Shown: positions 1 to 53,664, counted from the first letter of the stretch. The stretch is DNA of 64,000 nt from Macrostomum lignano (GCA_002269645.1 NIVC01001013.1:247142-311141); one strand, 5' to 3'. Translations and numbers: made by a program. The notes: generated by a model from the sequence alone, not told the origin.

Positions 1-3000
1 TTAAGCAAAATTTGATTAGGCCTAGCACTTTTTTACCTAGGCCTAGCCTAAGTTTAGCTTTTAATAAGAAAAAAATCAAATAATTATTTGGATAGGCCTA
101 TTTAAACAAACAATATTTATTATATAGTAGCAAAGATAAAACAATTGAATTTCAATATTAAATTTTTATTATTATTATTACTATTATTAATATAACCGTC
201 TAGATACTAGGCCCCTATATAATTATAATTTTAGCAAATTTAGGCCTATCTATAATGAAATGATCAGATTCTCACATTGATAGTTAAAGTGATAATAACA
301 TGGAAATGTTAAAAGTTAAGTGTTTTGGCTCTGGAATAAAACAAACAATTTTCAGCCAACTGAGAGCCAACTAAACTTACTGAGGTTGGGAAAATGCCAG
401 AAAGAAAATGTTGCAACTTGCAAAAATCTAGACTTCATGTTGCTAATATTATAGTCTGGAATCGACATACATAAGCTTTATTACTAAAACTTATTTTAAA
501 AATTATCTAGAGTTTTTAACTTGAAGTGTAATTAATGCATTTATTTGTGGTAGGATTACCCAGTTTATTCAGCCAGCCTAGTTTGACATTTAATATTATC
601 AAGCGATAAGCATTAATCGCTTTCCTTTCTTTTTCAATAAATTTAAAAGTTACTATATTAACAAACGTCTCACTAAAATACTAGCACCTACGCCAACGGT
701 TCTGCATTTTTATGATTTTCTAATTTAGGCCTGCTTACTATAATTACGCACAGAATTATTTCTATTGCAAATGTCTTTATGTAGACAATTATTTGAAATC
801 CATCGAAATTTCACAGTTCATCGAAAATTACACTCGAAAAGCTTATCATCGACAACCTAACAAGTATATAGCCTACATCCGGCCTACACGGGCAGGCAGG
901 CATGAGCCCATATGGGTTTAGTACAGTCATGGATCTAGTATGCTAGGCCTATGGGCTATGATAACAATAGTTTTTATTTGTTCCTTTTATTTTTATTAGC
1001 ATTTTAGTTTGTGTGCCTTTTCGATTGATATTGATAGATGATAGTGTCTATATCTAGTAGGCTACTAGGGACAGATTTAAGGGAAAGGGAAGGCAAGAGG
1101 GGTAGTAACCTCCCCCCTGCCCCTTGTAGGGGTGTGGTAATGATGGCGCCCCTATGAAGGCATAGCATGGGCCTAGTAGTAATATAGTAATGATGGCATT
1201 GGCATAGTAATGAATACTAGTAGGCCTAACTATTCTTTTTGGCTGGCACTGCTGACAGTGGCAGTCATAAATATTATCAATAATATTCTAAACATCTAAA
1301 GTAGACCTATAATACTTTGTATAGCCTAGGAATAGGCCTTTAAATCCAGATTCCAGAATAGGCCTAAGAAAAAAGATATAAAACTATCAAAAATACAAAC
1401 ATAGGCGATAGGCCTAGCCGCCTAGTCTAATTTGCTTAGCTAGGGCCTAACTTAATAGGCCTGGCCCGCCTAATCATACTATAAGCTTATACATCTCTTC
1501 TAATTTTATCTTTGACAAATGTCAATGATTTTTTGCCATATTTTATTTGTTATAGGCCAATCTATCATTCTATGTCATATATGTAGAAAGTCATTTTGTT
1601 TACCAATTTAAGAATTTTTATATTTTAAAAATTTTCAAGCTTATAAATTACATATTGAGTTTTAGCTTTTAAAATTCTAATTAGGCCTTATAAAGAATTC
1701 AAGTCTTAATGTAAAAAGACCCTTCTTAATGATTTTTATTAATATTTAAAAATTTTATATACAATAGGCCTAAGGCTAGTACTTTATCTTAACAAAATTA
1801 TATTTCTACTATCAAAGGTAGCTATCACAAGTTTCTATATCACATTAATTTAACTTTAAAATATTGATATAAAAGTTATCACAATATTTTATTAGTTTCA
1901 ACTAATTCTATTAAGTTATTAGCATGGATACTAAATTTCTAAAATAACTAGATAGGCCATTTATAATTTAGACATATATACTTAGTAAAACAGCTTTCTA
2001 TTTTCAGTTCACTAGAAAAAAGTGTGGCTTATATAAGCTATTTTATAAAAATAAAAATAGCTAAAATAACTTTGAAAAATTCATTAACCAAAGCTTATTA
2101 ATATAAACAACTTACTAATTGGTTTAGCAATATTGTATATTAGCCCATTCACTAAAATATATATTTATATGGTTAACTTTAGGCTAGAAAGGCAATAAAA
2201 ATTAGGGTGAAGCAGGAGATAAAAAAGAAAAATTTAGTTAAAAAAGTTTTAAACTAAGAAAGAGGCTAACAGCTAATAAATATGCCTTGGATTTAAAAAT
2301 ATATAAAATACTTAATTTTAATTTCTTATTGATGTGTTCTTGTTCTGTACTAATAGCATTCTTATATAGGCCTAAGCAGTATTTTGCTATTACTACTAAA
2401 TATACTACATATATATTTCTTTTAGTCTTATACATTATTAAAGTTAGAAGGCCATGGCTTTTAGTATTCTATAAGGCCCCTACATATGTATATTCTTTGA
2501 TATCTAAGTTGTCTACTGCTGATTTTGGTATTTTCACTAGAATATTTTGGAAAATATATATAATAAGACAAATTTTTCCTAAGAAATATTTGCAAATATG
2601 AAATTGCACAGATTTTTACATAAGAAAAAATTTCACAAAAAAATAATATAAATAATAGCAGCAACAAATAAAATGTTTTTAGCCAGTCAAGCAAGTTATG
2701 AAGGATAAAAACAATATCATAGGATACATTTCAGGGCCTAAATGCTAATATAAGATATAAAGACATGAAGAACAAATATAAAAAAGAAAAAATGGTATTT
2801 GAATCTTTTGCAACCAACTTTGCAAGCTATGTTTGCAAGGGTCTTGGTCTTTAGACTACAAAAATACTTTGTAGAAGCAAATAGATAGTTAACTCTAGAC
2901 TTGCATAGCATATCACACTAACTATTTATATAAAACTGTTTTACTTTAAATTACTGAGTAATATTAGGAATGAATATTCTATACGTATATTTTTAACTGT

Positions 3001-3117
3001 ATGTTTCTATCTATGTATATTAAGAAAGAAATTTTATTTCAAGCTAGCTTACTAATTTGAACATGTGTTAATAGTTTATTGATTTGCTATTTAGCTCTTC
3101 AGGATATCAGCTCCAAC

Positions 3118-4259
3118 ATGGATACACCAATACAAAATGAAGATTTATATAAACTACTTAACATTGATGAGAATGCTACAGAAAAGGAGGTAAGTTGTGC
3201 ATTCAATTGTGAATAATAAAGTTGAAATAAAGGCCCATTGCAAAACTAATTAGATGGCGAGGGATCGGTTTACTAAAATACAGGCATTTTTACTCCAGCT
3301 TTTTACCTAAGGTGCTAACTAAACCTCTCTAATCCATCCCCTGATAGATCACCAAAGCCTATCGCACCGCAGCGCTCAAAGTTCATCCGGACAAAAATCC
3401 AGACGATCCGCTGGCTGCTCAACGTTTCCGTCGACTGTCCGAGGCTCTGCAACTGCTCACTGACGCAGCCGCCCGAGCTGCCTACGATAAAGTGCGCCGT
3501 GGCCGTCAGGCTGCCGCCGAGCGGGCCCGGGCTCTCGGGGTAGGCCGGCGCCGATTCAAAGAGCAACTTGAGGCAGCCGAAGCTGCTGCAGCTGCCGCTG
3601 AGAGTGCGACGTCTGCAAGCGGCCGGAGCCGACAGGAGGATGAAGCCAGCCTAGAGAGGGAGAAGCAGCGGCTTAGGCGGGAGCTGAACGACGTTCTGGC
3701 TAGGGAGCAGGAGCTACTCAGGCAGGAGCTCCGACAGGCGGCTGCCGACAAGGATAAAGACAATCTGCCGACAATAAAATTGACTTGGCGTGGAGATCAG
3801 GATGACTGTTCTAGTCAGTCGGAGGCCTCTTTGAAGTCGCTGTGCTCCAGCTTCGGCGAGGTGGTCACCCTGTTGTACAGGCCGGGCAAGGCTAGTAGTA
3901 AGAAATCCAGTCGCGGTGGCAGCGGTGGTGTCGCTATTGTCGAGTTTCGTAGACACGACGACGCGGACAGGTTGGTCAAGGCCTTGACAGCGGGTCAAGG
4001 TGGACTGTCGGCTGTGTGGCTGCAGGGCCAGAAGCAGCAGCACCAGCAGACTCCCGTGCCTCCTGCCGCATCGGCAGCCACTACAGGCGATTGGCTGCCA
4101 ACCAATCAGGGCCGACCGTCTGGCGATTGGCTGCGCAAAGTGACAGCCGACGATCTAATTAAAATGTTTTCGCGTGGCAAACGCGCTCATCCTGGCGACG
4201 ATAAGAATAGTACGGATGATGATAATGCTGCATCTGCTGCGCCTACTGATGATCAGTAG
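3118..4259 (+). CDS. DNAJC17: DnaJ subfamily C member 17 (Cwc23/Cwf23-like J-domain + RRM protein), 2 exons: 3118-3189, 3348-4259 (~327 aa)
   Basis: Exon 1 encodes MDTPIQNEDLYKLLNIDENATEKE, followed by a GTAAGT donor at 3190. Acceptor tgatag ends at 3347 and the frame continues ITKAYRTAALKVHPDKNPDDPLAAQRFRRLSEALQLLTDAAARAAYDKVR (J domain with HPD motif). A coiled-coil region and a C-terminal RRM-like segment (IKLTW...SFGEV...AIVEF) follow. The join is phase 0 and in frame with ORF 3492-4259. AATAAA at 4379. Confidence 0.9.
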
Positions 4260-4519
4260 TATGTGTATAGCACTCAACTTGTGGCATTCTGATCAGTTGA
4301 TTTTATGCTGCATGTATATTGTTTTAAAGTCAAATACATTGCATTTATACAGTTTCTTACTACGATTAGAAAGTAAATAATAAACTGTTAATATTTTTCT
4401 AGTTTTTTAATATGGCCGATTGTAACGATGTATTCGAGTCCTTAGTGATTTTACACCCTGTAACGACTTTAAGACTGTAAAGAAATAGTCTTCGATGCTA
4501 TTACTACTGGTTTTTTTAG

Positions 4520-4980
4520 ACTAGAATTACATTTTTGGGCTGGAGATTACTGGTTTGAGATTTATATTACAGTTTTGAGTTTGATATTACCGGTTTTGTA
4601 GATTCATGTTACAGTTTAAGGCTGAAGATTACTGGTTTTGTAGATTCATATTATAGTTTTAGGCTGGAGATTACCGGTTTTTTAGATTCATATTACAGTT
4701 TTGAGTTTGATATTACAGGTTTTGTAGATTCATATTACTGTTTTAGGCTGAAGATTACTGGTTTTGTAGATTCAATCATATTACAGTTTTAGATCGATAT
4801 TACAGTTTTAGTAGATTCATATTAATTTTATATTCGATATTACAGGTTTTCTAGATTCATATTACAGTTTTAGATTCAATATTACAGGTTTTGTAGATTC
4901 ATATTACAGTTTTAGTCTGGAGATTACTGGTTTTGTAGATTTATATTTCAGTTCTAGGCTGGAGAATTACTGGAGTTTCA
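4520..4980. repeat. Degenerate T-rich tandem repeat (AGATTCATATTACAGTTTT core) between DNAJC17 and TFIP11
   Basis: Repeated TTTTGTAGATTCATATTAC and GGCTGGAGATTACTGG modules. Confidence 0.7.
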
Positions 4981-5082
4981 GATATCGCAGGTGAGAACTT
5001 GAGCGCACTCGCTGACCCCTCACCTACCCGCTCACTGAACATTGCAGCCAGCAGCCGCTAACGCCCAAGCGCACAACCTACA

Positions 5083-8000
5083 ATGGATGACGATGAAGAA
5101 GAGATGGAGCGCTTCGACATGACGGGGGCCGATTGGAAATATTCCATGGACCCGCTGGCCCAGCGGCGCCGAATGTCCAAGAAGCAGGCTTGGGCGGGCG
5201 TGTTCGCCAGCGACTCCGAAGACGAGGACGACGATGACGCCTTCGGCAATCGCCGCGGCTTCGGCAACCGGCGTCGCCGCGGCGGCGGAGCCGGCCGAGA
5301 CCGAGCCGGCGGTCCCATCAGTTTCGTTAGCGGCGGCGTCAAAGGCGGCCAGTCGGCCATGGATGATGATGACGATAAAGGAGGAAGAGGAGCAGCGGCT
5401 GATGAAGCTGGCGGCGGCGACATCACGGATGAGAGCGACGAGGAGATGCTGAGCGTGCGGCTGATCGAGCAGCGCCAGGCCGAGCGCAGGCAGCCGCAGC
5501 GGCCAAAACAGTCGGCCAATGATCGGCAGCGCCAGCAGCAGCAGGCCCAGGCGGAGCAGGGCTTCGGCCACTGGGAGCGGCACACCCGCGGCATCGGCAT
5601 GAAGCTGCTGGAGCAGATGGGCTACAAGCAGGGCAAAGGCCTCGGCAAAGACCTAGCTGGTATTGTCACTCCCGTTCAGGCTACAAAGCGCAAAGGCAAA
5701 GAGGCTGTGGGATTTTATCCCGAACAATCGGCGCCGGTGCCCAGGCGCGGCAACGAAGAGACGGTGACGGACGCGACCGCCAAAGCCACCTCACTTGCTG
5801 CTGCAGCCCGCTACAAGCGAAGTCAGCAGCAGCAGCAGCAGCCAAGGTACGCCATAAAAACACGAGAAGAGATTCTACGGGACGGAGCTAAAAAAGCGCC
5901 AGGCGGCGTGCCAGTGCTAGACAATGGCGCCAAAGTCAAGGTTTGTTCTGTCTATTGCAATGCAATTGTGGAGTGAATTATAACTCCGTTTCCCTGCAAT
6001 TCTCGGACCTTCTTCAATCACGCGACGCTACCCTCTGGTTCTTCAGGCTTCAGGTGTATCATTCAATCCTTCAGCTTACCGTCCTTCAGGTTATAGTTAC
6101 CCTCTCCTACAGTCCTTCAGGTTATAGTTACCCTCTCCTACAGTCCTTCAGGTTATAGTTACCCTCTCCTACAGTCCTTCAGGTTTTATTTTCCTCCCTC
6201 TCCTGTCCTTCAGATCATTTTACCCCCTCTCTCCTGTCTTTCAGGTCATTGCTACCCCCTCTCTCGATCTCGTCCTTCAGGCCATTGTTACTGTCTCTAT
6301 TCAGTTTTTCAGCCTGTAGTACCCCTAGTCCTTCAGGTTGTTGTTGATTTTACCCTATACCAGTTCGTAGTTATCGTTTAATCCCAGCTATCGTATCTAC
6401 CCAATATTCTATCCAGGTGATCGACATGACCGGGCCTCAGCAGCGGGTGTACGACGGCTATTCGGCGCTATCCCGATCGGCGGCCGGCGCGGACGATGAC
6501 GCGCTCGGTTCGGCAGCAGCCGAGGGCCAGCAGCAGCAGGGTGGCCAGCGCCGGTTCGACTGTCCCGCCCTGATGCACAACCTGGCCAGATTGGCCGACG
6601 CAGCCGAGGCTGAAATCGTTCGAACCGATCGGCAGCAGCGGGAGGATCGCGACAAATTGGCCAGCCTGCGAGCCGAGACCCAGCGACTGCAGCGAGGCCG
6701 TCGGGCTGTTCAGCTAGCCGAGTTGGACAGCCTCATCCGGCTGCTGGACGCCTACGACTCGGTTGCTAACCGGGGCGCCGGCCTGCCGGACGTGTGCGAC
6801 CTGGCCAAGAAGTTTCTGCAGTCAGCGCCGGCCGCGTACCGGCCGCTAGCCGCTGCTATGGTTACACCGGCTGCTAGGCGCTCTCTGGATGGCTGGCAAC
6901 CTCTGCTAGAGCCCGGCAGAGGCGCCGCTTGCGCTCGGCTGGTGCGCGAAGCTCTGGCGCCGGCCAACGATTCAATTGACGCCATCCTGTCCGAGTCGCT
7001 GCTGCCGCAGGTTCGACGCGCGCTGGCCCAGTGGAGTCCGAGGCAACCGGCCGAAGCTCTGGCTTTGGTGCAGGCGCTGCGAGGCCAGGCGCCCGGCATT
7101 GAAGATCTGATTAATACCGTTGTGAAGCCCGCGCTGCAGAGTGAGCTGCAACTGTGGGATCCGACTAGGGATCCGCAGCCTGTGCACGAGTGGTTGCAGC
7201 CCTGGTCTGCCGAGCTGGCGCTGGATGCCATGCACGAGCAGGTGAGAGACTGCTGTTTATCCATTGTGACCTGGTATTTATCCATTGGTATCTGATGCTT
7301 ATCGATTGGGATCTGATGCTTATCCATTGGGATCTGATGCTTATCCATTGTGACCTGATGCTTATCCATTGTGACCTGATGCTTATCCATTGGGTTCTTA
7401 TGCTTATCCATTGGGATCTGATGCTTATCCATTGTGACCTGATGCTTATCCATTGGGATCTGGTGCTTATCCATTGTGACCTGATGCTTATCCATTGGGA
7501 TCTGATGCTTATCCATTGGGATCTGATGCTTATCCATTGGGATCTGATGCTTATCCATTGCTATCTGATGCTTATCCGTAGTTTTCTGCTGCTAAATATT
7601 GCGGATCTGGCAATGATGCCAAAGCCTGTATAACCAATACCTTAACACACGAATACTGCAGGTATTGCAGAAGCTCGGCCAGTGCTTTGGCCAGTGGCGC
7701 CCGGACGACCTGAGTGCCAAAGGCGTCCTAACGCCATGGCGCGGCGCCGTGCGACCCCAACTGCTGGCGGCCTTCCTGCAGCGGCACGTTTTGCCCAAGC
7801 TGATCGACTGTCTGTCCGGGATGCGAATTGACCCGTCTGGCCAGCCGCTGGAGCAGTGGGTCTGGTGCAAGGCCTGGTGGGATCTGCTCAGTCCGCAGCA
7901 GATTGCTTCGCTGCTCGAGCGCGGCTTCTTCCCGGGATTTCACCGGGCCCTGTCGGCCTGGCTAGCCAGCCCCGGTGTCGACATGGCCCAGGTGGCCGCC

Positions 8001-8755
8001 TGGTACGCCGGCTGGCGGGACCAGCTGCCACCTGCGTGTCTGGACCTGCCTGGGGTGCAGCACCAGCTGGGTCAGGTCTGTGCACCCGATTTTCGCCTAC
8101 CCGCTCTGCATCGTTATACTTTCTCTGCCTGTTCTACCCTCACTTCCTCTTTCCTAACCTTTCTCATCTCTCTTCTCCCCTCATCTCTCTTCTCCTCTCA
8201 TCTCTCTTCTCCCCTCATCTCTCTTCTCCCCTCACCTCTCTTCTCCTCTCATCTCTCTTCTCCCCTCATCTCTCTTCTCCTCTCATCTCTCTTTTCTCAT
8301 CTCTCCTCTTCCATCCTGCTTTCTCACCTCCCTCTCCTCTATTTTAATATATTTCTACTCTAATTATTTAATTCACCATCCCGCAGGCCCTTCGCCTGAT
8401 GGACGCCGCCTTCTCCGGCCAGGAACCGGCTGCCGTTGTAGCCGCCGGCGCCGCTGCCGCTGCCGCCGCCGCGGCCACCGCTTCCAGCTCTTCCGTAGCG
8501 CCGCAGGCTCAGCCAGCCACTGTAGTGAACTATAATCACGGCCTGCTGGGCGCCAGGGACCTTCTAGAACGCCGGGCCCAGGAGCACGGCATCGTGTTCG
8601 CCCCCACCGGCCGCCGGCATCACGGCAAGCAGGTGTTCAATTTTGGTCGGCTACAAATTTGCGTTGAACGCGGCGTAATTTACTGGCTGACTGAGGGCCA
8701 ATGGCGCCCAGTGTCCCTTGACGATGTTATGAATAGGGCCACCATGCGGCAGTGA
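5083..8755 (+). CDS. TFIP11: Tuftelin-interacting protein 11 / Ntr1-Spp382-like G-patch spliceosome disassembly factor, 4 exons: 5083-5940, 6417-7241, 7662-8075, 8387-8755 (~821 aa)
   Basis: G-patch ([38 protein letters not shown]). The conserved KVK|VIDMTG motif is split by intron 1. GCFC-type region ([19 protein letters not shown]) and C-terminal [31 protein letters not shown]. All three GT-AG introns join in phase 0. Confidence 0.92.
6087..6185. repeat. 31-bp tandem repeat x3 in TFIP11 intron 1
   Basis: Unit TTATAGTTACCCTCTCCTACAGTCCTTCAGG, with degenerate copies continuing to ~6340. Confidence 0.85.
7258..7578. repeat. 21-bp minisatellite (~15 copies) in TFIP11 intron 2
   Basis: Unit CCATTG(G/T)GA(T/C)CTGATGCTTAT. 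Confidence 0.92.
8160..8340. repeat. CT-rich low-complexity repeat in TFIP11 intron 3
   Basis: Recurring CTCATCTCTCTTCTCC modules. Confidence 0.8.
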
Positions 8756-8844
8756 TCTTCAACTCCATTCTTTTCTTTATTGAATAATCTGGCTAGCTTC
8801 ACGCTTATCCTGATTGGCCAAATTACTTATCCTTTTCTGCTATC

Positions 8845-9222
8845 CCCATCTCCCTGTCCTCCCATCTCCCTGTCCTCCCATCTCCCTGTCCTCCCATCTC
8901 CCTGTCCTCCCATCTCCCTGTCCTCCCATCTCCCTGTCCTCCCATCTCCCTGTCCTCCCATCTCCCTGTCCTCCTATCTCCCTGTCCTACCATCTCCCTG
9001 TCCTCCCATCTCCCTGTCCTCCCATCTCCCTGTCCTCCCATCTCCCTGTCCTCCTATCTCCCTGTCCTCCCATCTCCCTGCCCTCCCATCTCCCTGTCCT
9101 CCCTTTTCCCTGTCCTCCCATCTCCCTGTCCTCCCATCTCCCTGTCCTCCCATCTCCCTGTCCTCCCATCTCCCTGTCCTCCCCATCTCCCTGTCCTCCC
9201 ATCTCCCTGTCCTCCCATCTCC
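8845..9222. repeat. 16-bp minisatellite (~23 copies) downstream of the TFIP11 stop
   Basis: Unit CATCTCCCTGTCCTCC. Confidence 0.92.
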
Positions 9223-10494
9223 CTCACTGATAACTTATACTGCATACTCAGCACTTGAACTCATTCAAAACCATATCCAGATCGTGGTTAAATAAAATAG
9301 TTCAAGCTAAAATATTGCGCGCGTGTTACAAAGCATTTTCTATGATATCAGTTTCGTTTGAGGCATCCGGATAAAGTGTAAGTGTGTTACTCAAAACTAC
9401 ATGCTCCTTGTGAATTTTGTATCTTATTAATTAATTAATTCAAATTGTAACAGATAATTTGCTTAATAAAAAAAAATATTTGCCTTCCAAAAAATGCAAA
9501 AGCTGTGTTTTATTAATCTGTTAAAATCTAAGAAAGTTTTTACTCTGGCCTTTGATCAAGGCCTTGGTCTCTTTTTTATTTTAGAGGAAAAATGATTTTC
9601 CTCTATGAAATGAAATGAAAAGCAAAACAGCCAGCATAACTTTGTGGCTTATTAATCATGTTATCATCATTTGCTGACTTGTTGCAAACTGTTTTTTAAC
9701 TGTGTAAATCGTGTATTTAAACAAACGGGGTACATATATCATGTTTATTAAACTCGGTGTGGCTTTGTTGAGTTAATAAGTAGATATTTTATTTTGAAAA
9801 AAATTATGTTATAAGTCTTGCGAGGATATAAGCTTCTCTAAACCTAGCCAGGGTTTAGGGAAGTGTTAACACCTGAAAAAACTGTCTTTCACTTTGTTAT
9901 CGAGAACTAATCTAGAATTTGATTGAAAAACAACAATTTAAAAAACACATTTTTACGTTAGACTGCTACGAAACTTGGGCCAGATACGCTCGTATTGATC
10001 ACAGCAAAGGAAATATTGAAAATTTCAATAAAAATTCAAACAGTGCACAAACAGATCAAATATTAAAGGTTTAAAATACCTTTATCAGATATATCATGGA
10101 TTAAAAAATAATCATAATTTACAAGTAGTAAAAATCACTGCCGTTTTTTGTTATAAATCTCGGAAATCTAATTAGGCTTCTTTTAAGGTACAAACTACAG
10201 ATGTGGCTATTTTAAGGCTAAATTTCCTTTTTGCTAGAAAATCGAAACCTTGACCTTCAAATGAAACTAGTGAGTTCTCGTGCTTCTGAAAATCTGTCTG
10301 TCCAATTACTTCGTACGCATCTTTCTGGTGCATTTTGCGGCGAAAAATAGCCTTCATAGATTTAATAACTCAACGTGATCTACTTACTATTAGTAGTAAG
10401 CTTTGAAAAAACGACAAGAAAAAATATGATTTCAAATTAATAGACAAAACACTCGTAGACAGTAGGTTATGCTATCAGTAGTATTTGTTGAATA

Positions 10495-12668
10495 TCACTG
10501 CAACGGCGGGCAGTCCTGGTGCAGGAAGTTCCTGGGCTGGATGACGCCTTTCTGACGCTCGACATCCGAGGCCAGGTAGCCGAGAGCCGCCTCCATCACT
10601 TGCGGATCGGCCTCTGAGTTCAGCTGGTACAGGTAGGTGTACAATCGCTTCCAAGTGTCGAAATTCACTCGAGCCGGGCCGCCCTCAGGATCGGCGGTGA
10701 GCTGCTCGCAGATGAGCTTCATGGTGCCGGTCAGGTCGCTGCACAGGGAGGCGCAAGCGACGGCGAAGAATTTCAGCCATTCCACTTTGCCAGTGAAGTC
10801 GCCGATCTGGGTAGTTAGGAGTTCGCCAGTCTTTGCGTTATTTTGTTTTGGTGTTGTGTTGCTGCTGGTTACAGGGTATACAGCAGGGTCGTTTTGGGTT
10901 CCAGGGGCGCCAAGTTAGGTTTTAAGGGCTTCAATTCAGTTGCAAGGACGACAATTCAGTTTCTAGGGCGCAATTTCAGTTGCTAGGGCGACAAATGATT
11001 CAATTGCTAGAGGCCGCCAAGTTAGTTGTAAGGGAGTCAATTCAGTTGCAAAGGCGCAAACTCAGTGCAAAAAGGTGCAAATTGATTTAGTTGTTAGGGG
11101 CGCCGGGTGCTAGGGGAGCCAATTGTCAGGTGCTAGGGGAGCCAATTGTCAGGTGCTAGGGGAGCCAATCGTCAGGAGCTAGGGGAGCCAATTGTCAGGA
11201 GCTAGGGGAGCCAATCGTCAGGAGCTAGGGGAGCCAATTGTCAGGTGCTAGGGGAGCCAATTGTCAGGAGCTAGGGGAGCCAATTGTCAGGTGCTAGGGG
11301 AGCCAATTGTCAGTAGCTAGGGGAGCCAATTGTCAGGAGCTAGGGGAGCCAATTGTCAGGTGCTAGGGGAGCCAATTGTCAGGAGCTAGGGGAGCCAATT
11401 GTCAGGTGCTAGGGGAGCCAATTGTCAGTAGCTAGGGGAGCCAATTGTCAGGAGCTAGGGGAGCCAATTGTCAGGTGCTAGGGGAGCCAATTGTCAGGAG
11501 CTAGGGGAGCCAATTGTCAGGTGCTAGGGGAGCCAATTGTCAGGTGCTAGGGGAGCCAATTGTCAGGAGCTAGGGGAGCCAATTGTCAGGTGCTAGGGGA
11601 GCCAATTGTCAGGTGCTAGGGGAGCCAATTGTCAGGTGCTAGGGAAGCCAATTGTCAGGTGCTAGGGGAGCCAATTGTCAGGAGCTAGGGGAGCCAATTG
11701 TCAGGTGCTAGGGTAACCAAGTCAGGTGCTAGGGGAGCCAATTTTCAGGAGCTAGGGGAGCCAATTGTCAGGTGCTAGGGTAACCAAGTCAGGTGCTAGG
11801 GGAGCCAAGTCAGGTGCTGGGGTAACCAAGTCAGGTGCTGGGGTAACCAAGTCAGGTGCTGGGGTAACCAAGTCAGGTGCTAGGGGAGCCAAGTCAGGTG
11901 CTGGGGTAACCAAGTCAGGTGCTAGGGGAGCCAATTGTCAGGTGCTAGGGTAACCAAGTCAGGTGCTAGGGGAGCCAAGTCAGGTGCTGGGGTAACCAAG
12001 TCAGGTGCTAGGGGAGCCAAGTCAGGTGCTAGGGTAACCAAGTCAGGTGCTAGGGGAGCCAATTGTCAGGTGCTAGGGTAACCAAGTCAGGTGCTAGGTG
12101 AGCCAAGTTCCTTTAAAAAACAGCCTGTCATAAAAATATTTTTGACCCGCTGAACGGAGCGGACTGTGCTAGAACTATCGAGCCGCTAAGAGCACATTCC
12201 TGGTGGTACAATGTATGCATACTGTATTTTAATAAAGGATTCGCTATCTAAAACGAATATCACAAAAATACGCTGATTGCACCCTGAATGGCATTCAGTA
12301 TTCACCTGGAACAGTTCCTGCAGACGCTCTTCCGGCAGATTTAGCGCCTTCCATTTTTCTGTGATGTCGCTTACTTCAACTTGCTTCTTTGGGCCCAGCT
12401 GCTTGTTGAGCACTCGGAGCAGACCGGGAGTGAGGCCGGTGTCCGTCTTCTGCGTTGCGGTTGCCATCTCGAGGCGCTCCTTCACTGGCGGAGTTTCACC
12501 GTCGGCCATGGCACGGAAGTAAGCGGCTGCCCAAGCCAGCACATCTGGCGGCTGGGTGCGGATTGCAGATTTGGTGAATTGCTTCAGGATGTCTGGCAAT
12601 GGGGGCGGGATCTGAATCTGCTCCGAGCAGTAGTAGGGGTCACCATTGTCTTTGTTTTCACCAGACAT
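10495..12668 (-). CDS. ROPN1L: Ropporin-1-like (RIIa D/D-domain, AKAP-binding ciliary/flagellar protein), 2 exons: 12668-12306, 10806-10495 (~224 aa)
   Basis: N-terminal YCSEQIQIPPPLPDILKQFTKSAIRTQPPDVLAWAAAYF (RIIa-like domain). CAG|GTGAAT donor at 12305 and cccag acceptor at 10807 join in phase 0 to IGDFTGKVEWLKFFAVACASL..MKLICEQLTADPEGGPARV, which matches the ropporin family. Confidence 0.88.
11105..12105. repeat. 23-bp/21-bp minisatellite in the ROPN1L intron
   Basis: GTGCTAGGGGAGCCAATTGTCAG grading into GTGCTGGGGTAACCAAGTCAG. Confidence 0.92.
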
Positions 12669-14702
12669 TGCCAAGCCTTGAATGATAATTTTGGTTGTTG
12701 AAGCCTTGAAACTATGGCGACTGGAAAGAAAAAAATGTTTGGATTACTTACAGTAAAAAACTAGAATGTTTATTTATTATTGAAAACAATTATTGATAAA
12801 GTAGGTCTTCGACTTCAAAAAGATATAGAAAATAGGGAAATATTTATCAAGAGTTATTAAACAAGCACAACTTATTTTTACTCTTAAATAAACTTTGTTT
12901 ATAAGTTGTAGAAAAGTAGAGAAAGTCTAGAGAAAAAATGGAACAACTGGGCCATGATATTGAAGTTAAAATTAGGTTCAAAATTAATTTCGTGGAGAAG
13001 TATATTTTATGTGTTTAGAACATTTAACAATTTAGATATACCAGAAAGGCATCATTTAAAATTCATAAAGCAAGTGGTTTATGATAGGTAGGCCAATATG
13101 ATAAATCAAAAAGTAAAGCGATTTATTCATTTAATACTCATTTTTCTATTTCTGTGACTGTATAGAAAGAAACGGTCCTTAAAACGTGCATCTAGCTACT
13201 GACAAATTAACAAACTAAAGGCACATAAGCACACTGCTTAACTTGACTACATAACTGTGTGACTAAAAAGAAAATTTTGCTAAAATTCTAAGCTTTCTAG
13301 CTACCTCTAATATCCATTAAGATAAGAATTTGAAATAAGATACATGATTTATTCTAAAGCTCAAAAATAATTAACTAATTGTTTGGTGAAAATTATTTAT
13401 AACATTGAAATATATGCTAGTGCCGTATAGTGCGCTGCGCAGGAGGCAGGAATCCATGCAAACAAGATTTAACTAACGTAAGCTTCATTGCTATTATTGC
13501 AGCTGATTTACTACAAAAAAGCACCTTTCGCTGTCTTAACACTCATGCATGTACTATGTGTTTTTGATCAAACAGATCACAACAAAATCTCGAATATTGA
13601 ATAGTCACTGGAATTTTAATATAAAATCAATAATAAATTAAAAGCAACATTGATACTTTCTGTAAACAATGTTTTATCAAAGGTAGTGAAGCTTTTTAAT
13701 TTTAAAAGTGATAAATAAGCGTAAGGAATAGTTGAATTTACTTTTAAGTCTAATTTTGCAATTCGTTTAACATGTTTTGTTTAAAAAAGTGTAAAGCAGC
13801 CCGAAAGAAATTATTTATCAAGGATGACTTAAGTAGTCCTTGAAATCTATAGAAATGAGAGTATCACGAAATCATCACAAAAATATATCACATTTCTCAT
13901 TTACCAATATTAATAATGATTGTGTGACTGGTGACTCAAACGTGAAAAAAAAAAAATCTAATGATTTTTGTTTTGCAGATTTAGTGTCATCACTATTTAA
14001 GCCGAGGCCCTAGAGCTAGGCGGCCTAGGGACTTTAGTCAGTTATGACGACATATCTTATTAAGTTATTCTTACATTTTTAGTTGACTTTTGCTTGCTCT
14101 AGGATCAGGAGAGCCTTTATTTGTGCTCTTTTGAAGAGTTGTTAATTAATACAAAATTATTTCTTTTGTTACTATCACTGTGCCAGCACAATGAGCATTA
14201 ACAAAGCAAATTAGTAGGCATAAAACCCAGACTAAGACAAGACAAATAGATTGTCTAAATATCTCATGCCCTAGTTATATTTAAAAATTAATAAATACAA
14301 CATACAACATTATACATTAGGCCTAATACTATTGTTAGTTACTATATTTAATTTAGTTTGATTTGATAACTTTGTCATTGGTAGGGGGGCTTATTTATAT
14401 TTGAATTGAATAGGCCTATATTGATTTGAATATAAAATACTTAGCTGGTGCATGGTGGTATAGGCCTAGGTAATTTACTCTGAGTCTTTTAGAAAAGAAG
14501 TGCACATATACTTTTTGCACTCTGTTTTGTTTACTTTGTTTACTTTGCTAACACTTATTTGCTCAATTTATCTTGATCTAATATACTTAAAAACTTTGAG
14601 TAGGGGGCCTACAAATTTTTTAATTCACTTTTTACATAATCCACTTTGTTTATAACCTGTGTTTCTAATAAAAAGCAACTTTAAATTTATATTGCTTGAT
14701 AA

Positions 14703-15360: not shown

Positions 15361-17370
15361 ATGTCATCCAGCACTGGACACCGCTCTGGCAAGCTGGCAG
15401 CTGCAAAGAGCGAGAAGGACCTACTCCAGGACGTGCTGGGCATGCTGCTAAGAGACGAGGACAATAAGTACTGCGCCGACTGCGATGCTAAAAGTCCCCG
15501 CTGGGCCAGCTGGAACATTGGCGTATTCCTCTGCATCAGATGCGCCGGCATCCACAGGAAGCTGGGCGTGCACATCTCGCGAGTGAAATCTGTCAACTTG
15601 GACTCCTGGACAGCCGAACAGGTGGCTGGGGTGGCCGCTATTGGTAACTCGCTAGCCAGAGCCGCCTACGAGGCCAACGTGCCGGATGGATTCCGTCGGC
15701 CGCAGACGGACGCCACGCTTGAGCAGTTCATCAAGGCTAAGTATGAGGAGAAGCGCTACTTAGCCAGGGACTGGGTGCTGCCTAAACCCGATCCAGCTGC
15801 TGTGTACGATCTGCTCAAGACCAACACTGCTCAGCGACGAGCTGCCGCCGCTGCTAACTCTGCCGCCGCTGACGGCGTGTCGCCGAAGCTGCCGGCGCCC
15901 GCGCCCGCGCCAGCCAGGCGCTCTGCTGGCAACACCACCGCGGCAGTGAAGCCTCCGCCGCAGGCTGCGTCTCAATCAAAGCCTGAGCCACCGCCCCCAG
16001 AGCAGCAGCCGGCAGCTCCTTCAGCAGTGCCGCAGCAGCCGCCGCCAGATCTGCTTGGCGGTCTGGCCGATGACGGATTTGGCGACTTCTCTAGCGGCGG
16101 CGGCGGTGGCGGAGTCGTCAGCTCGCACGCCAACGATTTGGCATTCTTAAGCGAGGGCAGCGCCACGACCGCCACTGCTGCCGACCTGTTTGCCAGCGAT
16201 TCTTCTAATTCTGCCAACACCGCCGCTGCTCCAAAGAAATCTATGAAAGATTCTATCATGGCTTTGTATGGTCAGCAGAATGCCGCTGCTGCTGCTGCTG
16301 CTTCTAGTGGAGGCGGCGGATTTCTAGCTCACAATCAGCAGCAGCAACACTTTGGCGGGATGCAATACTCGATGAGTACTCCTCAACTAGCTTCTGTAGC
16401 CAATTCAACTGGCTACCAGCCTATGCCGCAGCAGCAACAGCAGCAGCAGTATCAGCAACAATATCCATTTCTGCAGCAGCAACATCAACCTCAACAGCAG
16501 CAGCAGCAGCAGTTCTCGGCTCTGTACAGTCAAACTGCTGGCGCTCTCTACTCAACAGGTGGGCAGTTTGGTCCGCCGCAATTTGGCGGCGTGCCGACAC
16601 CGTCTTCTCAGCAACAGCAGCAGCAGCAGCAGCACTATGGATTTCAGCCACCAGGCTATGTCAATAATCAGTCTGCTTATTTGCTACAAGTAAGTGTTGC
16701 TTAATATTTTTTATTTGGTTTCCTCTATACTAATTTTTAGCACTTTATTGTAGGATAGATTATAGATCTTATATACACTAGATAGGCCACTGGCCACTCC
16801 CCATTCAGACAATGAATAGAAAATGACACCCAATAATGACTCGGGGACAAACAATGTTCGCTTGCACTACTGAAAACTAATCGTCAGTAGTCTATGGACA
16901 TAGACGAAAAAAATATATTTCATCGCAATACTTAAGTATAAGATCCATGTCTATGGTATATACTATAAATGAAGTTCTCTGTGGCCTTGAGACTTCAAAT
17001 TTGGGTTTTAACTTCGAATGCCCCATTCCACGGCTTGGGTGTCTGCCATTGCAACTGCTTTTTTCAACAATGAAATTTTCAAAGCCCATTTGAACTTTCT
17101 TTGCCCTTTTACTTGCTCTGTCAGCGGCCCGCCATGTCCACAATAATTCAGTAACTTTAGCTAATAATGTATAATAATAATAATAGTATTAGTACTATTA
17201 ACCGTTTGCGGCAATTCCCACAGATACAGAGCCAGATGGCCGGATTAAACTTCAAAGGTGCCGCCAATTCTGCTGGCTTTCCGCAACAGCAGCAGCAGCA
17301 GCAGCAACAGCCGCAGCAATACGCTGCTCAACAGCAGTCTGCTTTTGCTGCTGGCGACTTTTGGAACTAG
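15361..17370 (+). CDS. SMAP1: Stromal membrane-associated protein (SMAP1/2-type ArfGAP), 2 exons: 15361-16689, 17224-17370 (~491 aa)
   Basis: ArfGAP zinc finger CADC-x16-CIRC with [10 protein letters not shown] and [23 protein letters not shown]-like [13 protein letters not shown] motif and Q-rich tail. CAA|GTAAGT donor at 16690 and cccacag acceptor at 17223 join in phase 0 to IQSQMAG...FWN*. Confidence 0.88.
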
Positions 17371-29806: not shown

Positions 29807-31038
29807 ATGGACTGGAGCGGCTATCACCACGGCTCGCAGTTCAATTATAACCCGCATCCGGGAGGCGCCAGCGGACTTGGCAAGCAGGGCTTCGCCATGA
29901 TGGGCAACCTGGGCGTCGGGATCGCCACACCGCCGGCTCATCACGAGATGCTCCATCATCCGGCCCTGACCGCCTACTCCAGTAAGACTGAACTCTGTCA
30001 CACTACTCTGTCTCGTATTCATGAGACGAACTCGAGTTTCTCTAAGTTTTCATTTTCCAATTTGCAGCCCCTGTGCGCAAGCAGCGGCGCGAGAGGACCA
30101 CCTTCACCAGGGCGCAGCTGCAGATCCTGGAGGAGCTGTTCGGCAAGACCAAGTACCCGGACATCTTCATGCGCGAGGAGGTGGCGCTGCGGATCAACCT
30201 GCCGGAGTCGCGGGTGCAGGTCTGGTTCAAGAACCGCCGGGCCAAGCAGCGCCAGCAGCAGAAGCAGAAGGAGGCCGGCGAGAAGGCCGCCCACTGCGGC
30301 GTGTCGGCCGCCTCCGCCGGACAGCCGGTCGGACACGCCGGACACGCCGGACACGCTGGACACGCCGGACACGCCGGACACGCCGGACACGGAGCGAAGG
30401 CCGTCTCCGTCTCGGCTTCCGCCGCGCCGCTGGCCGGAGGCTCCGCACTCGCCGCCGCCACCGCTGCCGCTGCGGCCGCTGCCGCCAACATCGGCGGCAG
30501 AGGCGGCGGCGCCGGCATCGGCGGCGGAGGCGGCGGCGCCGGCATCGACATGGCCGGCTGCCTCCACGACGCCGGCGGTGGCGCTGTCAAGTGCGAGGAC
30601 GTCGACTCGAGCAGCCCGTCGCCCGCCAAGACGCTCAGCCTGCCCGGCTCGGCCGAGGCCTCCAAGCGCAGCCCCGCCGTCTCCGCCAACGGCCACGCCG
30701 CCGCCGCGGCCGCCGCTGCCGCGCACTTCCTCACCGACTCTACCGGACACTCCGGCGCCGCCGGCTGGGGCGCCTCGGCCGCCGGACGCCTCGCCGGACC
30801 CAACAGCCCGACTGACGGCGGCTCCGCCTACGCCACCTGCGTTCAGCAGCAGCACCGCAGCGCTGCCGCAGCCGCAGCCGCCGCGGCCGCTGCCGCTGCC
30901 TACCACAACCAGACCTACGGACAGTACAGCGCTACAGGCTACCCTCCGTATGACTACCTGCGACCTGCTGCCTACCCGCAGCAGCCGCCAGACTATGACT
31001 ATCAGGGCTGGTCATCGCGCAAGCTGCAGCTGCTGTGA
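29807..31038 (+). CDS. otx: Orthodenticle/Otx K50 homeobox protein, copy A, 2 coding exons: 29807-29981, 30068-31038 (~381 aa)
   Basis: Homeodomain [57 protein letters not shown] (K50, Otx diagnostic) and an Otx-tail-like end [15 protein letters not shown]. The 86-nt phase-1 intron GTAAGA...TTTGCAG (29982-30067) joins exon 1 in frame. Confidence 0.93.
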
Positions 31039-48680: not shown

Positions 48681-49604
48681 TCAGGCCCTGATTTTTAGTG
48701 TTGCGCTAGATTCTATCAGGCCATTAGGTTAAAAAGCAATCAGAATTATTGGGTAGCAATGCCGATTTCCACTCCAGACACTTCCCAATCTCGAACTCCA
48801 TGGCTCGCAGCTCTCAGTCTCCTCTGGGCGCCTCATCGTTTCGTTTTCTCTTCTCGTCCCTACCCCATCAGAGAGCCGTCTTCTTTTACAGCAGCAGCAG
48901 CAGCAGCAGCAGAAGCGTTCTCTCCCTGTCCGTCTGTCCGTCTGTCTGCCTGTCTGCCCGAATTGTGACACGAGATCAGGTGAAACTTGAAGCTGCGCGG
49001 AACAAAAAACTCAGAGGCAAGTCGAATCACGCTGCTGCTGCTGCTGCTGCTGCTGCTGCGAGGGGGATAATTAAGCAAAGTTTTGTGGAAGTTTGGAGCT
49101 AAAATTCCCGGATAAAAATGTAGATAAAAATTATTGCCCAGCGCTTAATTAACACATCGTACGAAAGTTCGATTCGAGTGTATCCAAGCAGCTCTCCTGG
49201 ACCCAATTAGAGCATACAGCTCAGAGAATTGTTCTTCTCAGACAGCAGTGTTTGCTAATCGGATCATCGGAGGCGAAGTTTGCCATTCGCCCCTTCGGCT
49301 TTTTCACAGGAAGAAATCCCAGGTGATTGCGCGAGTTTGTCTTGAGGCGGCGCAGAGCACACAGTGCGCAGGCTGTCAACACGCTCTGCTTCCAGGAGAA
49401 CTGTAGTCTATAGAGTTTGTTTCTTTCTCTCTCTACTCTCTTCTTTTAGAAGACACGAGGCGAGGTGCAAAAGTGTATAGTAGCGTGAGTTAAATAATCC
49501 CCAGTGTCATGCAAGGTGTCACACTCACTGACAGGCCGACAGACCGTTCTTGGTGAATATGCAGTAGATTACACAGTCCACTCAATACACTCAAATGTGG
49601 ATGT

Positions 49605-52700
<3,096 letters not shown>

Positions 52701-53664
52701 TCAGTGAATTTGAGACAGTATTTAGCTTTAGCGGTGACTTAAGTCGCGATTCAATCGAATTGTTTCGGCAAAAATTTACACGGAAAGATGTTGTGCAAGA
52801 TCCCAAGAAAAAAACATGACAATATCCTTGATTAGAACACCAAAAGCTAGCCCGGAGCAGCCCCCACATCCATACGAATGCAGTGAAATGGCCAACCAGC
52901 AGTCATCCGGGGGGTAACGCAGGCGGACACGCGAGCCTCGGTCGTGTGGACTTAAGCTCCTAATCGGCTTAGCCCTCTGTGAAACTTTGAAGAAACTTCG
53001 CTACTGACTGGCGGCACCTGCGGCTGCCCCGGAGCCTCTTGCGTCACCGGGCAGAGGCCGGGAGGAGATACATGCATTAGGAGAAAAAATATTGGGTAAG
53101 GACGGGAAGAACGAGCGGTATGAAATTCAGTCAAAACTGCGTCATCCATCCAATATTCTATCTTAGATTTCAGCTCCACAAGAGGTAGGTCAATTTTTTT
53201 CGATATCAACCTCGAGCGCCCAGGCCTAGCAACTAAAATCCCCTTTGGAGTTTAGAGTGGGCCGATGCCATTGGCCACCTGTGCGGCCGTTCAATTGGTC
53301 TCGTATCACTGTGGGGATTAGGGCCATAGAGCGTGAGCTCAATTCAGCGTGAAGGGCGTTGGAGACCGCTGCTCAATTAGTTCCCATTCAGGATATTTCT
53401 GTTCGCTAAATTAGCCCTGAGTCGGCCGTGAGTTGAGCTGTATATGGTCCGCAGTTGAAATTGCGATTGCATCTGCCTACTCTGAGTAGTCTAGTTTGAA
53501 TGTGCGAGTGCGTGGCTGATAAAACAGTCGTTTTAGATTAGAAATAGACTATGTCTTTAGACAGTAACAGGCAGTGTCTGTCGAAGGAGTAGCTGTAATA
53601 TACGCTCGTACATAGATTGGAACAAGGTAGGGTCTTGAGTGTCTAGGCACTGTAAACAGTCACA

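What the first reader, a model, noticed from the sequence alone, without database searches (positions are those of the whole stretch)
3090..8755. Candidate operon of two interacting spliceosome-disassembly factors: DNAJC17 (Cwc23) followed by TFIP11 (Ntr1/Spp382)
Seen: the genes are co-oriented, with only 823 nt from the DNAJC17 stop to the TFIP11 ATG. AATAAA lies at 4379, followed by a T-rich repetitive spacer and acceptor-like AGs at 4981 and 5047, with no obvious separate promoter. Established: yeast Cwc23 (DNAJC17 ortholog) binds Ntr1/Spp382 (TFIP11 ortholog), the G-patch activator of Prp43 in spliceosome disassembly, and SL trans-splicing with operons occurs in flatworms. Inference: this is a functionally coherent polycistronic unit for two partners of one complex, which would be unusual for an animal operon.
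Basis: partly seen in the sequence, partly recalled or inferred. Interest (0 to 1): 0.72.

Follow-up and report, generated by a model that had tools for sequence, protein, structure and literature searches.

The report
Likely flatworm operon: DNAJC17 then TFIP11
Two neighbouring genes of the flatworm Macrostomum lignano, encoding two proteins that work together to take the spliceosome apart, are probably transcribed as one unit. Such two-gene operons are common in this animal, the pairing is not seen in the other animals checked, and the transcript evidence could not be reached.

Summary
The window is Macrostomum lignano (contig NIVC01001013.1).

- **Genes.** A DNAJC17/Cwc23 orthologue (327 aa; exons 3118-3189 and 3348-4259) is followed on the same strand by TFIP11/Ntr1 (821 aa; 5083-8755). 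The TFIP11 model is identical to the NCBI protein.
- **Spacer.** 823 nt separate the stop from the ATG. There is one AATAAA, at 4379. A 42-nt minisatellite fills 4526-4973. Acceptors TTTCAG|4982 and TTGCAG|5048 match the published trans-splice motif.

M. lignano trans-splices about 30% of its genes and has about 15% of them in operons. Published operon spacers are about 100 nt once repeats are subtracted; here 133-199 nt remain. Two older UniRef gene models splice from a donor overlapping the DNAJC17 stop codon (4258|GTATGT) to 5048 or 5070. That hints at read-through transcripts.

An operon is therefore likely (about 0.65) but unproven. No reads were reachable, and a separate start site near 4975 is not excluded.

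The claim that this is "unusual" is weakened in three ways:
- Thousands of operons exist in this species.
- No DNAJC17 lies within 10 kb of TFIP11 in Echinococcus, Opisthorchis, Ciona, Caenorhabditis bovis or an unnamed relative.
- A few partner pairs are expected by chance.

Verdict: a new member of a known kind, of modest interest.

The parts
3093..3111 (+). Cluster of three acceptor-like AGs upstream of the DNAJC17 ATG: TTTAG|3095, TTCAG|3103, ATCAG|3111. These are candidate spliced-leader (SL) addition sites for the first gene.
   Evidence: Sequence. The NCBI 5'-partial CDS of this copy opens at 3097, which puts the transcript start at about 3095, just after AG 3093-3094. The CDS of copy L003 opens at the equivalent of 3112, just after AG 3109-3110. 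The neighbouring 236-aa minus-strand gene shows the same pattern in all three copies. This fits the published TBONE procedure, which cuts transcripts at SL sites (PMC5730564).
3118..4259 (+). DNAJC17 / Cwc23 orthologue, 327 aa. Exons 3118-3189 and 3348-4259; intron 3190-3347; stop TAG at 4257-4259.
   Evidence: Hand-built model equals the C-terminal 327 residues of PAA73417.1, Mlig017391g2. Pfam DnaJ E 8.6e-22, with the HPD motif present. RRM_1 scores 19.7 bits, just under the 20.7 cut-off. Every named hit among the top 24 is DNAJC17, at 33-57% identity.
4259..4264 (+). Consensus-like splice donor GTATGT overlapping the last base of the DNAJC17 stop codon (TA|GTATGT).
   Evidence: This donor is used by UniRef models P0098 and P0099. 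I reproduced their junction peptides exactly by joining 4258 to 5070 and 4258 to 5048.
4379..4384 (+). AATAAA, the likely poly(A) signal of DNAJC17, 120 nt after the stop. The cleavage site is inferred at about 4400.
   Evidence: It is the only AATAAA or ATTAAA in 4200-5100. Its function is inferred; no poly(A) reads were available.
4526..4973 (+). T-rich minisatellite, 42-nt period built from two ~21-nt half units, 10.7 copies. It fills 54% of the spacer.
   Evidence: TRF. 45% T, and each unit carries TTACAG/TTTTAG/TTGTAG. The array is found only here in the window. It is present in both other copies of the locus. Repeats are reported to inflate operon spacers in this species (PMC8629364).
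4976..4990 (+). Acceptor TTTCAG|ATATCGCAG followed at once by a consensus donor (CAG|GTGAGA at 4991). This is candidate SL site 4982, with a possible 9-nt micro-exon.
   Evidence: TTTCAG matches the published trans-splice acceptor motif [T/C]TNCAG, and GTGAG matches the published cis donor motif GT[G/A]AG (PMC8629364). Use of either site is not shown.
4991..5047 (+). Possible 57-nt 5'-UTR intron (GTGAGA...TTGCAG). Its 3' end is the second candidate SL acceptor, with the exon starting at 5048.
   Evidence: Acceptor 5047 is the one used by model P0099. An in-frame TAA at 5059 explains why the NCBI TFIP11 CDS is complete, provided the transcript starts upstream of it.
5083..8755 (+). TFIP11 / Ntr1 (Spp382) / STIP orthologue, 821 aa. 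Exons 5083-5940, 6417-7241, 7662-8075 and 8387-8755.
   Evidence: Model identical to PAA73418.1, Mlig019197g1. Pfam TIP_N, G-patch and GCFC. Matches human TFIP11 (8ro2_TF) at E 1.8e-97 over residues 1-816.

Best explanation
The locus is most likely an ordinary two-gene spliced-leader (SL) operon of Macrostomum lignano.

Proposed mechanism:
1. Transcription starts in the AT-rich region upstream of 3095.
2. The DNAJC17 mRNA is capped by SL addition at one of the AGs at 3094, 3102 or 3110.
3. It is cleaved and polyadenylated about 20 nt after AATAAA at 4379.
4. Polymerase continues through the repeat-filled spacer.
5. The TFIP11 mRNA is released by addition of the 35-nt SL at TTTCAG|4982, with the 57-nt piece 4991-5047 then removed in cis, or directly at TTGCAG|5048.
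6. Occasionally the donor that overlaps the DNAJC17 stop codon (4258|GTATGT) is joined in cis to the same acceptors. That would give the read-through products captured in older gene models.

Shown: gene identities, geometry, signals, organism, and the existence of the across-spacer gene models.

Inferred: the read-through itself, SL addition at TFIP11, and the single promoter.

The pairing of two physical partners is real. It is probably a recent, lineage-specific adjacency. Whether selection for co-expression keeps it is open.
For: 1. The organism is M. lignano. The TFIP11 model is 100% identical over its full length to BOX15_Mlig019197g1, and the locus is NIVC01001013.1.
2. [quoted passage not shown] Operons were defined as co-oriented neighbours with a trans-spliced downstream gene and a repeat-adjusted distance under 1 kb, with a mode near 100 bp. 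The authors note that repeats inflate operon spacers (PMC8629364).
3. Here the genes are co-oriented with nothing annotated between them. The CDS-to-CDS gap is 823 nt, of which 448 nt are tandem repeat. From the inferred poly(A) site at about 4400 to the acceptors, 133 nt (to 4981) or 199 nt (to 5047) remain after subtracting the repeat.
4. Both candidate acceptors match the published SL acceptor motif [T/C]TNCAG.
5. The upstream gene looks trans-spliced. Its NCBI CDS is 5'-partial and opens right after an AG in two copies of the locus, as does the neighbouring 236-aa gene in three copies. This is what cutting at SL sites would produce.
6. Two UniRef models from the earlier assembly run across the spacer, joining 4258 to 5070 (P0098, in frame) and 4258 to 5048 (P0099, out of frame, ending 14 codons later). 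I reproduced both junction peptides exactly. The out-of-frame model is hard to explain without transcript evidence.
7. 69.9% of trans-spliced genes are conserved with human, against 36.9% of the others. TFIP11 is such a conserved gene.
8. About 7% of assembled transcriptional units in this species are multi-SL precursors (PMC5730564).
Against: - No read, cDNA or transcript coordinate was reachable, so SL addition at TFIP11 and a dicistronic precursor are not demonstrated.
- How the UniRef fused models were made could not be checked, because the paper describing them is not held. P0098 uses a weak AAG acceptor and carries an internal patch and a truncated end, which is typical of a gene predictor stitching reading frames together.
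- YTNCAG is frequent, and the repeat itself supplies 11 copies.
- A TATA-like TTTATATTT (4940-4948) lies about 35 nt before 4982.
- The composition switches abruptly at 4974 from 45% T to 37% C. That is equally what a separate core promoter with a first mini-exon and 5'-UTR intron would look like.
- The current NCBI annotation keeps the genes separate.
- The three M. lignano copies are 95-98.5% identical across the aligned blocks, so their shared layout says nothing about constraint.
Confidence: 0.65

Rival explanations
1. The two genes are independent and merely close. TFIP11 would have its own start site at about 4970-4985, a tiny non-coding first exon ending at 4990, and a 57-nt 5'-UTR intron (4991-5047). 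DNAJC17 transcription would end after 4379. An SL might still be added to TFIP11 as a monocistronic gene.
For: - A consensus donor GTGAGA sits at 4991, only 9 nt after AG 4981, with a good acceptor at 5047. A donor upstream of an acceptor normally favours cis-splicing over trans-splicing (Conrad et al. 1993, as cited in PMC8629364).
- A TATA-like TTTATATTT lies at 4940-4948.
- There is a sharp switch to C-rich unique sequence at 4974.
- A canonical AATAAA follows the upstream stop by 120 nt.
- The NCBI annotation lists two separate genes.
- 60% of trans-spliced genes in this species are not in operons.
Against: - After subtracting repeats, the gap is 133-199 nt. That falls in the published operon mode near 100 bp rather than among ordinary intergenic distances.
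- Other intergenic gaps around this locus are 1.7 to about 7 kb.
- Older models splice across the spacer.
- The TATA-like string is just a degenerate repeat unit in an AT-rich array.
Confidence: 0.27
2. The two reading frames are really one gene. The spacer 4259-5069 would be an intron that removes the stop codon, giving a DNAJC17-TFIP11 fusion protein as a main product.
For: - UniRef model P0098 (1118 aa; the UniRef100 entry counts 2 members) is exactly this in-frame join, 4258 to 5070.
- The donor TA|GTATGT is consensus-like.
Against: - The acceptor at 5069 is a weak AAG that does not match the species motif.
- P0098 also carries an internal patch and a truncated 3' end, as predictor-built models do.
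- There is an in-frame TAG, then a proper AATAAA 120 nt later. TFIP11 has its own ATG with A at -3 and G at +4.
- The newer transcript-based annotation separates the genes.
- None of the 59 TFIP11 relatives carries a DnaJ domain.
- No DNAJC17 relative carries G-patch or GCFC.
Confidence: 0.05

Closest known systems
Spliced-leader (SL) operons of Macrostomum lignano (Wudarski et al. 2017, PMC5730564; Ustyantsev & Berezikov 2021, PMC8629364)
   Same: Same organism. Co-oriented neighbours less than 1 kb apart, with a repeat-filled spacer that shrinks to 133-199 nt once repeats are removed. YTNCAG acceptors lie ahead of the downstream ATG. Two-gene size, the commonest class (75%). Both genes are conserved housekeeping genes, the class enriched among trans-spliced genes.
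   Different: SL addition to the downstream gene, the defining evidence, could not be seen here. The published work names no individual DNAJC17-TFIP11 operon. The gene identifiers and names are absent from the held papers and supplements.
Caenorhabditis elegans operons (SL2-resolved; Blumenthal & Gleason 2003; Allen et al. 2011, as cited in PMC8629364)
   Same: The upstream gene has a normal poly(A) signal, the spacer is about 100 nt, the downstream mRNA is freed by trans-splicing, and most operons hold two genes. From my own knowledge, some nematode operons do hold functionally related genes.
   Different: M. lignano has a single SL and no specialised SL2. The spacer here is swollen by a minisatellite. 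In C. bovis the TFIP11 orthologue has no DnaJ neighbour within 10 kb.
Operons of parasitic flatworms, such as the trematode enolase operon (PMC12582326)
   Same: Flatworm SL-resolved polycistrons. The median intercistronic distance is 99 bp in S. mansoni.
   Different: Few operons are conserved between species. Neither tuftelin/TFIP11 nor DNAJC17 appears in that paper's text or its 17 supplementary files. No DNAJC17 lies within 10 kb of TFIP11 in E. multilocularis or O. felineus.
Yeast NTR spliceosome-disassembly module: Cwc23 - Ntr1/Spp382 - Ntr2 - Prp43
   Same: The two products are orthologues of Cwc23 and Ntr1. Cwc23 binds the Ntr1 C-terminus and keeps Ntr1 on the spliceosome. Both are chains of the yeast intron-lariat spliceosome 5Y88.
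   Different: Gene 1 here has the J-domain plus RRM layout reported for Cwc23 orthologues of intron-rich eukaryotes. I found no report that the two genes are linked in any other organism. The interaction has not been tested for the flatworm proteins.
Read-through ('conjoined') transcripts between tandem genes
   Same: A donor in the last exon of the upstream gene is joined to the first strong acceptor of the downstream gene (4258 to 5048 or 5070), as in models P0098 and P0099.
   Different: Here it would be a by-product of operon transcription, in which the trans-splice acceptor is captured in cis. Whether such RNAs exist is not shown.

Membership tests
M. lignano spliced-leader (SL) operon (criteria of Ustyantsev & Berezikov 2021) | Immediately adjacent genes on the same strand, with no opposite-strand gene between them | tested here: met
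   DNAJC17 at 3118-4259 (+) and TFIP11 at 5083-8755 (+). Nothing else is called between them in the NCBI annotation.
M. lignano spliced-leader (SL) operon (criteria of Ustyantsev & Berezikov 2021) | Repeat-adjusted intergenic distance below 1 kb (mode about 100 bp) | tested here: met
   823 nt from stop to ATG, of which 448 nt are tandem repeat. About 133-199 nt remain between the inferred poly(A) site and the acceptors. The poly(A) site itself is inferred from AATAAA.
M. lignano spliced-leader (SL) operon (criteria of Ustyantsev & Berezikov 2021) | Downstream gene carries the 35-nt spliced leader | not testable with these tools
   No RNA reads or mRNA coordinates were reachable. Only motif-level support exists: TTTCAG|4982 and TTGCAG|5048 match [T/C]TNCAG, a motif that is frequent here.
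M. lignano spliced-leader (SL) operon (criteria of Ustyantsev & Berezikov 2021) | One promoter and one polycistronic precursor | not testable with these tools
   The only support is indirect: older models P0098 and P0099 splice across the spacer. Their evidence base is unknown.
DNAJC17 / Cwc23 | N-terminal J domain with the HPD motif | tested here: met
   Pfam DnaJ E 8.6e-22 over residues 9-71; 'VHPDKN' is present.
DNAJC17 / Cwc23 | C-terminal RRM, as in orthologues of intron-rich eukaryotes | tested here: inconclusive
   RRM_1 scores 19.7 bits against a cut-off of 20.7, over residues 182-237. Most DNAJC17 hits carry a precomputed RRM_1 domain (PF00076), and their alignments cover 72-96% of the query.
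DNAJC17 / Cwc23 | Closest relatives are DNAJC17 rather than other J proteins | tested here: met
   Every hit among the top 24 that carries a source name is DNAJC17, from molluscs, annelids, vertebrates and fungi. Other DnaJ classes appear only from E about 1e-12.
DNAJC17 / Cwc23 | Binds the Ntr1/TFIP11 orthologue of its own species | not tested
   Known for yeasts and reported as conserved. Not examined for the M. lignano proteins.
TFIP11 / Ntr1 / STIP | TIP_N, G-patch and GCFC domains in that order, with full-length similarity to TFIP11 | tested here: met
   Pfam TIP_N 5-99, G-patch 168-210, GCFC 425-658. Human TFIP11 E 1.8e-97 and C. elegans STIP-1 E 9.7e-87, both end to end.

The most novel reading that the evidence does not exclude
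The adjacency is functional rather than accidental. One precursor would deliver the chaperone-like partner (DNAJC17) and the Prp43 activator it stabilises (TFIP11) in fixed proportion. A fraction of that precursor would be cis-spliced from the donor inside the DNAJC17 stop codon to 5070. That would make an in-frame DNAJC17-TFIP11 fusion protein, a natural 'Rosetta-stone' fusion of two spliceosome-disassembly partners. It would arise in an animal whose operon expression itself depends on the spliceosome.
Probability: 0.08. Interest if true: 0.6.

Novelty: new member of a known kind. Interest (0 to 1): 0.3.

Why it matters
If confirmed, this is one more of several thousand M. lignano operons. 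What sets it apart is that its two products are direct physical partners in spliceosome disassembly.

Animal operons mostly group unrelated housekeeping genes. Clear cases of partner proteins sharing one precursor help with the question of whether operons in animals ever serve co-regulation or stoichiometry.

M. lignano can be made transgenic, so the spacer and the upstream promoter can be tested directly.

The practical value today is smaller:
- It flags that older UniProt/WormBase models (A0A1I8FY55, A0A1I8FZF6) fuse the two genes.
- Because of that fusion, 90% protein clustering lumps DNAJC17 with TFIP11, which can mislead homology searches.

Because the adjacency is absent from the cestode, trematode, tunicate and nematode inspected, no deep evolutionary constraint is indicated.

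Tried and rejected
- **Exact look-up of my spliced proteins.** I went through homology hits instead.
- **Missing self-hit for DNAJC17.** The search gave no M. lignano hit. The reason is that the M. lignano DNAJC17 proteins sit inside the TFIP11 cluster, bridged by the fused model.
- **Public transcript assemblies.** The cluster holds no Logan or ENA member, so no cDNA-like contig with a leader could be read.
- **Gene identifiers and names in papers and supplements.** I searched for Mlig019197, Mlig017391, Mlig000474, TFIP11 and DNAJC17 and found nothing. The 2021 operon paper has no held supplement.
- **The paper describing the older annotation.** Wasik et al. 2015 is not held.
- **Paralogous copies as a test of constraint.** L002 and L003 are 95-98.5% identical across the aligned blocks, spacer included, so they are uninformative. 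The apparent deletion of the 5' part of TFIP11 exon 1 in L003 is a garbled stretch of the assembly.
- **Synteny.** No DnaJ gene or DNAJC17-like sequence lies within 10 kb of TFIP11 in E. multilocularis, O. felineus, Ciona intestinalis, C. bovis or the unnamed ENA contig. Three schistosome-family look-ups found no record.
- **A shared CAG(G)ATATC motif at both 5' ends.** It occurs 3 times in the window against about 2.4 expected, and the third site is not at an obvious gene start. I treat it as unexplained and probably chance.
- **SL RNA gene.** It is not in the window or in the fetched loci.
- **Searches not run.** No Macrostomum relative closer than 38% identity appeared in the database, and only one context look-up remained.

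Full report
**Observation**

I read 2500-9500 and built both gene models by hand.

Gene 1:
- It starts at ATG 3118.
- It has one intron, 3190-3347 (GTAAGT...TAG).
- It stops at TAG 4257-4259 and encodes 327 aa.

Gene 2:
- It starts at ATG 5083.
- Its exons are 5083-5940, 6417-7241, 7662-8075 and 8387-8755, all with GT-AG borders.
- It encodes 821 aa.

The stop-to-ATG gap is exactly 823 nt. AATAAA at 4379 is the only canonical poly(A) hexamer between 4200 and 5100. The spacer is 40% T, and 448 nt of it (4526-4973) is a 42-nt-period minisatellite. The only correction is that 3103 is an acceptor-like site, not the start codon.

**Identity of the genes and the organism**

Gene 2:
- It has TIP_N, G-patch and GCFC domains.
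- It matches human TFIP11 (8ro2_TF, E 1.8e-97) and C. elegans STIP-1 (E 9.7e-87) end to end.
- It is 100% identical over 100% of its length to Macrostomum lignano BOX15_Mlig019197g1 (sequence equality checked).

The window is therefore M. lignano assembly Mlig_3_7, contig NIVC01001013.1.

Gene 1:
- It has a J domain with HPD and a sub-threshold RRM.
- All of its named hits among the top 24 are DNAJC17.
- My model equals the C-terminal 327 residues of NCBI PAA73417.1.

The absence of a self-hit has a trivial cause. The M. lignano DNAJC17 proteins are filed in the 90% cluster of TFIP11, bridged by a fused gene model.

**The functional link**

The literature held here states the following (bioRxiv 10.1101/2024.06.27.600868):
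- Cwc23 binds the C-terminus of Ntr1.
- Cwc23 is needed to keep Ntr1 on the spliceosome.
- The interaction is conserved within species.
- DNAJC17 is the human orthologue of Cwc23.
- Orthologues in intron-rich eukaryotes add an RRM.

In my own searches, Cwc23 and Spp382 appear as chains T and U of the same yeast entry, 5Y88.

**Is it an operon?**

The background comes from Ustyantsev & Berezikov 2021 (PMC8629364) and Wudarski et al. 2017 (PMC5730564):
- M. lignano has one 35-nt spliced leader (SL).
- 30% of its genes are trans-spliced.
- 10,458 genes (15%) are assigned to operons, 75% of them two-gene.
- The acceptor motif is [T/C]TNCAG.
- Distances between trans-spliced neighbours peak at about 100 bp once repeats are subtracted. 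The authors stress that repeats inflate operon spacers.
- About 7% of assembled transcriptional units are multi-SL precursors.

Against these criteria, the pair shows the following:
- It is co-oriented, with nothing annotated between the genes.
- It lies under 1 kb even without adjustment.
- It leaves 133 nt (to 4981) or 199 nt (to 5047) between the inferred poly(A) site and the acceptors after removing the repeat.
- Both acceptors fit the motif.

The first gene itself looks trans-spliced. Its NCBI CDS is 5'-partial and opens right after an AG in this copy (about 3095). It also opens right after a different AG in copy L003 (equivalent of 3111). The neighbouring 236-aa gene shows the same signature in all three copies.

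**Gene models that cross the spacer**

Two UniRef models from the earlier assembly are informative.
- P0098 (1118 aa) joins the two proteins through '...[13 protein letters not shown]...'.
- P0099 (354 aa) ends '...[18 protein letters not shown]'.

I reproduced both exactly by splicing 4258 to 5070 and 4258 to 5048. The donor is TA|GTATGT, overlapping the stop codon.

P0098 looks predictor-made. It uses a weak AAG acceptor and has an internal patch and a truncated end. P0099 is out of frame and uses the strong acceptor, which is hard to explain without a transcript spanning the spacer. I could not verify how these models were made, because the paper is not held. I count them as moderate, indirect evidence of read-through.

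**What argues the other way**

- No reads, cDNAs or mRNA coordinates were reachable, so the two defining features are untested. These are the leader on TFIP11 and a common precursor.
- A consensus donor, CAG|GTGAGA at 4991, lies 9 nt after AG 4981, with acceptor 5047 lying 57 nt further on.
- A TATA-like string lies at 4940-4948, and the composition switches sharply at 4974.
- Taken together, these features also fit a separate start site with a mini first exon and a 5'-UTR intron.
- YTNCAG is common, and the repeat supplies 11 copies of it.

I put the operon at about 0.65, independent genes at about 0.27 and a true single fused gene at about 0.05.

**Is the pairing special?**

The three M. lignano copies (window, L002, L003) are 95-98.5% identical across the aligned blocks, spacer included. 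They say nothing about constraint.

No DnaJ gene or DNAJC17-like sequence lies within 10 kb of TFIP11 in any of these:

| Genome | Locus |
|---|---|
| Echinococcus multilocularis | L005 |
| Opisthorchis felineus | L008 |
| Ciona intestinalis | L006 |
| Caenorhabditis bovis | L007 |
| Closest non-Macrostomum relative (unnamed ENA contig) | L004 |

None of the 59 TFIP11 relatives carries a J domain. The 2025 survey of parasitic-flatworm operons does not mention either gene in its text or supplements.

With several thousand operon pairs, and perhaps a 1-in-1000 chance that a neighbour is a known partner, a few such pairs are expected by chance. This is my rough estimate, not a computed value. The pairing is real and neat, but nothing shows that it is selected.

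**Verdict**

- The locus is most likely one more two-gene SL operon of M. lignano: a new member of a well-described kind, with an appealing but unconserved pairing of partners.
- The most novel reading still open is that the read-through splice makes a real DNAJC17-TFIP11 fusion, or that the operon fixes the stoichiometry of the two partners. I give that under 0.1.
- The decisive data already exist publicly as SL-trimmed and poly(A)-anchored RNA-seq tracks for this assembly, but they could not be reached with these tools.

Noticed in passing
window 30061-31036 and 32917-33892: Inverted duplication of a homeodomain-encoding exon. The arms are 976 nt, reported as 100% complementary, and 1880 nt apart. 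They give two near-identical 321-aa reading frames on opposite strands. It may be a recent inverted gene duplication or an assembly artefact.
   Followed up: partly
window 6077-6291, 7250-7577, 8161-8339, 8845-9224; also 49490-52870: Each intron and the 3' flank of TFIP11 carries its own distinct minisatellite, with periods of 31, 21, 17 and 16 nt. A repetitive stretch of about 3.3 kb lies at 49.5-52.9 kb (seen as long repetitive reading frames), and many more such stretches fill the window. This fits the very repeat-rich M. lignano genome.
   Followed up: partly
protein cluster of P0036 (UniRef A0A1I8FY55, A0A1I8FZF6; NCBI PAA73417.1, PAA47119.1): The fused gene model P0098 causes DNAJC17 and TFIP11 proteins to share one 90% cluster represented by TFIP11. 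As a result, a DNAJC17 query returns no M. lignano hit. This is a database trap for orthology work on this species.
   Followed up: yes
window 3100-3108, 4979-4986, 19896 (-): CAG(G)ATATC occurs three times in the window. Two of the sites sit at the acceptor-like positions just upstream of the two genes' start codons. About 2.4 occurrences are expected by chance, and the third site is not at an obvious gene start. Unexplained.
   Followed up: partly
L003 11880-12090 (equivalent to window 4992-5563): In the second copy of the locus, the 5' part of TFIP11 exon 1 is replaced by about 200 nt of garbled, only loosely similar sequence. It looks like a poor-consensus stretch of the long-read assembly and explains why TFIP11 is not annotated there.
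   Followed up: partly
window 10495-12704 (-) and 15361-17248 (+): The neighbours are a 236-aa gene with no Pfam match on its largest exon, whose 5'-partial CDS starts right after an AG in all three copies, and an ArfGap gene. The first converges on TFIP11, so the putative operon ends with TFIP11.
   Followed up: partly
L004 (ENA ERZ25070786 ctg145728l) 10001-12199: The closest TFIP11 relative outside M. lignano (38% identity) is an intronless gene on a metagenome contig, flanked by reverse-transcriptase and DDE-transposase fragments. The organism is unknown.
   Followed up: no
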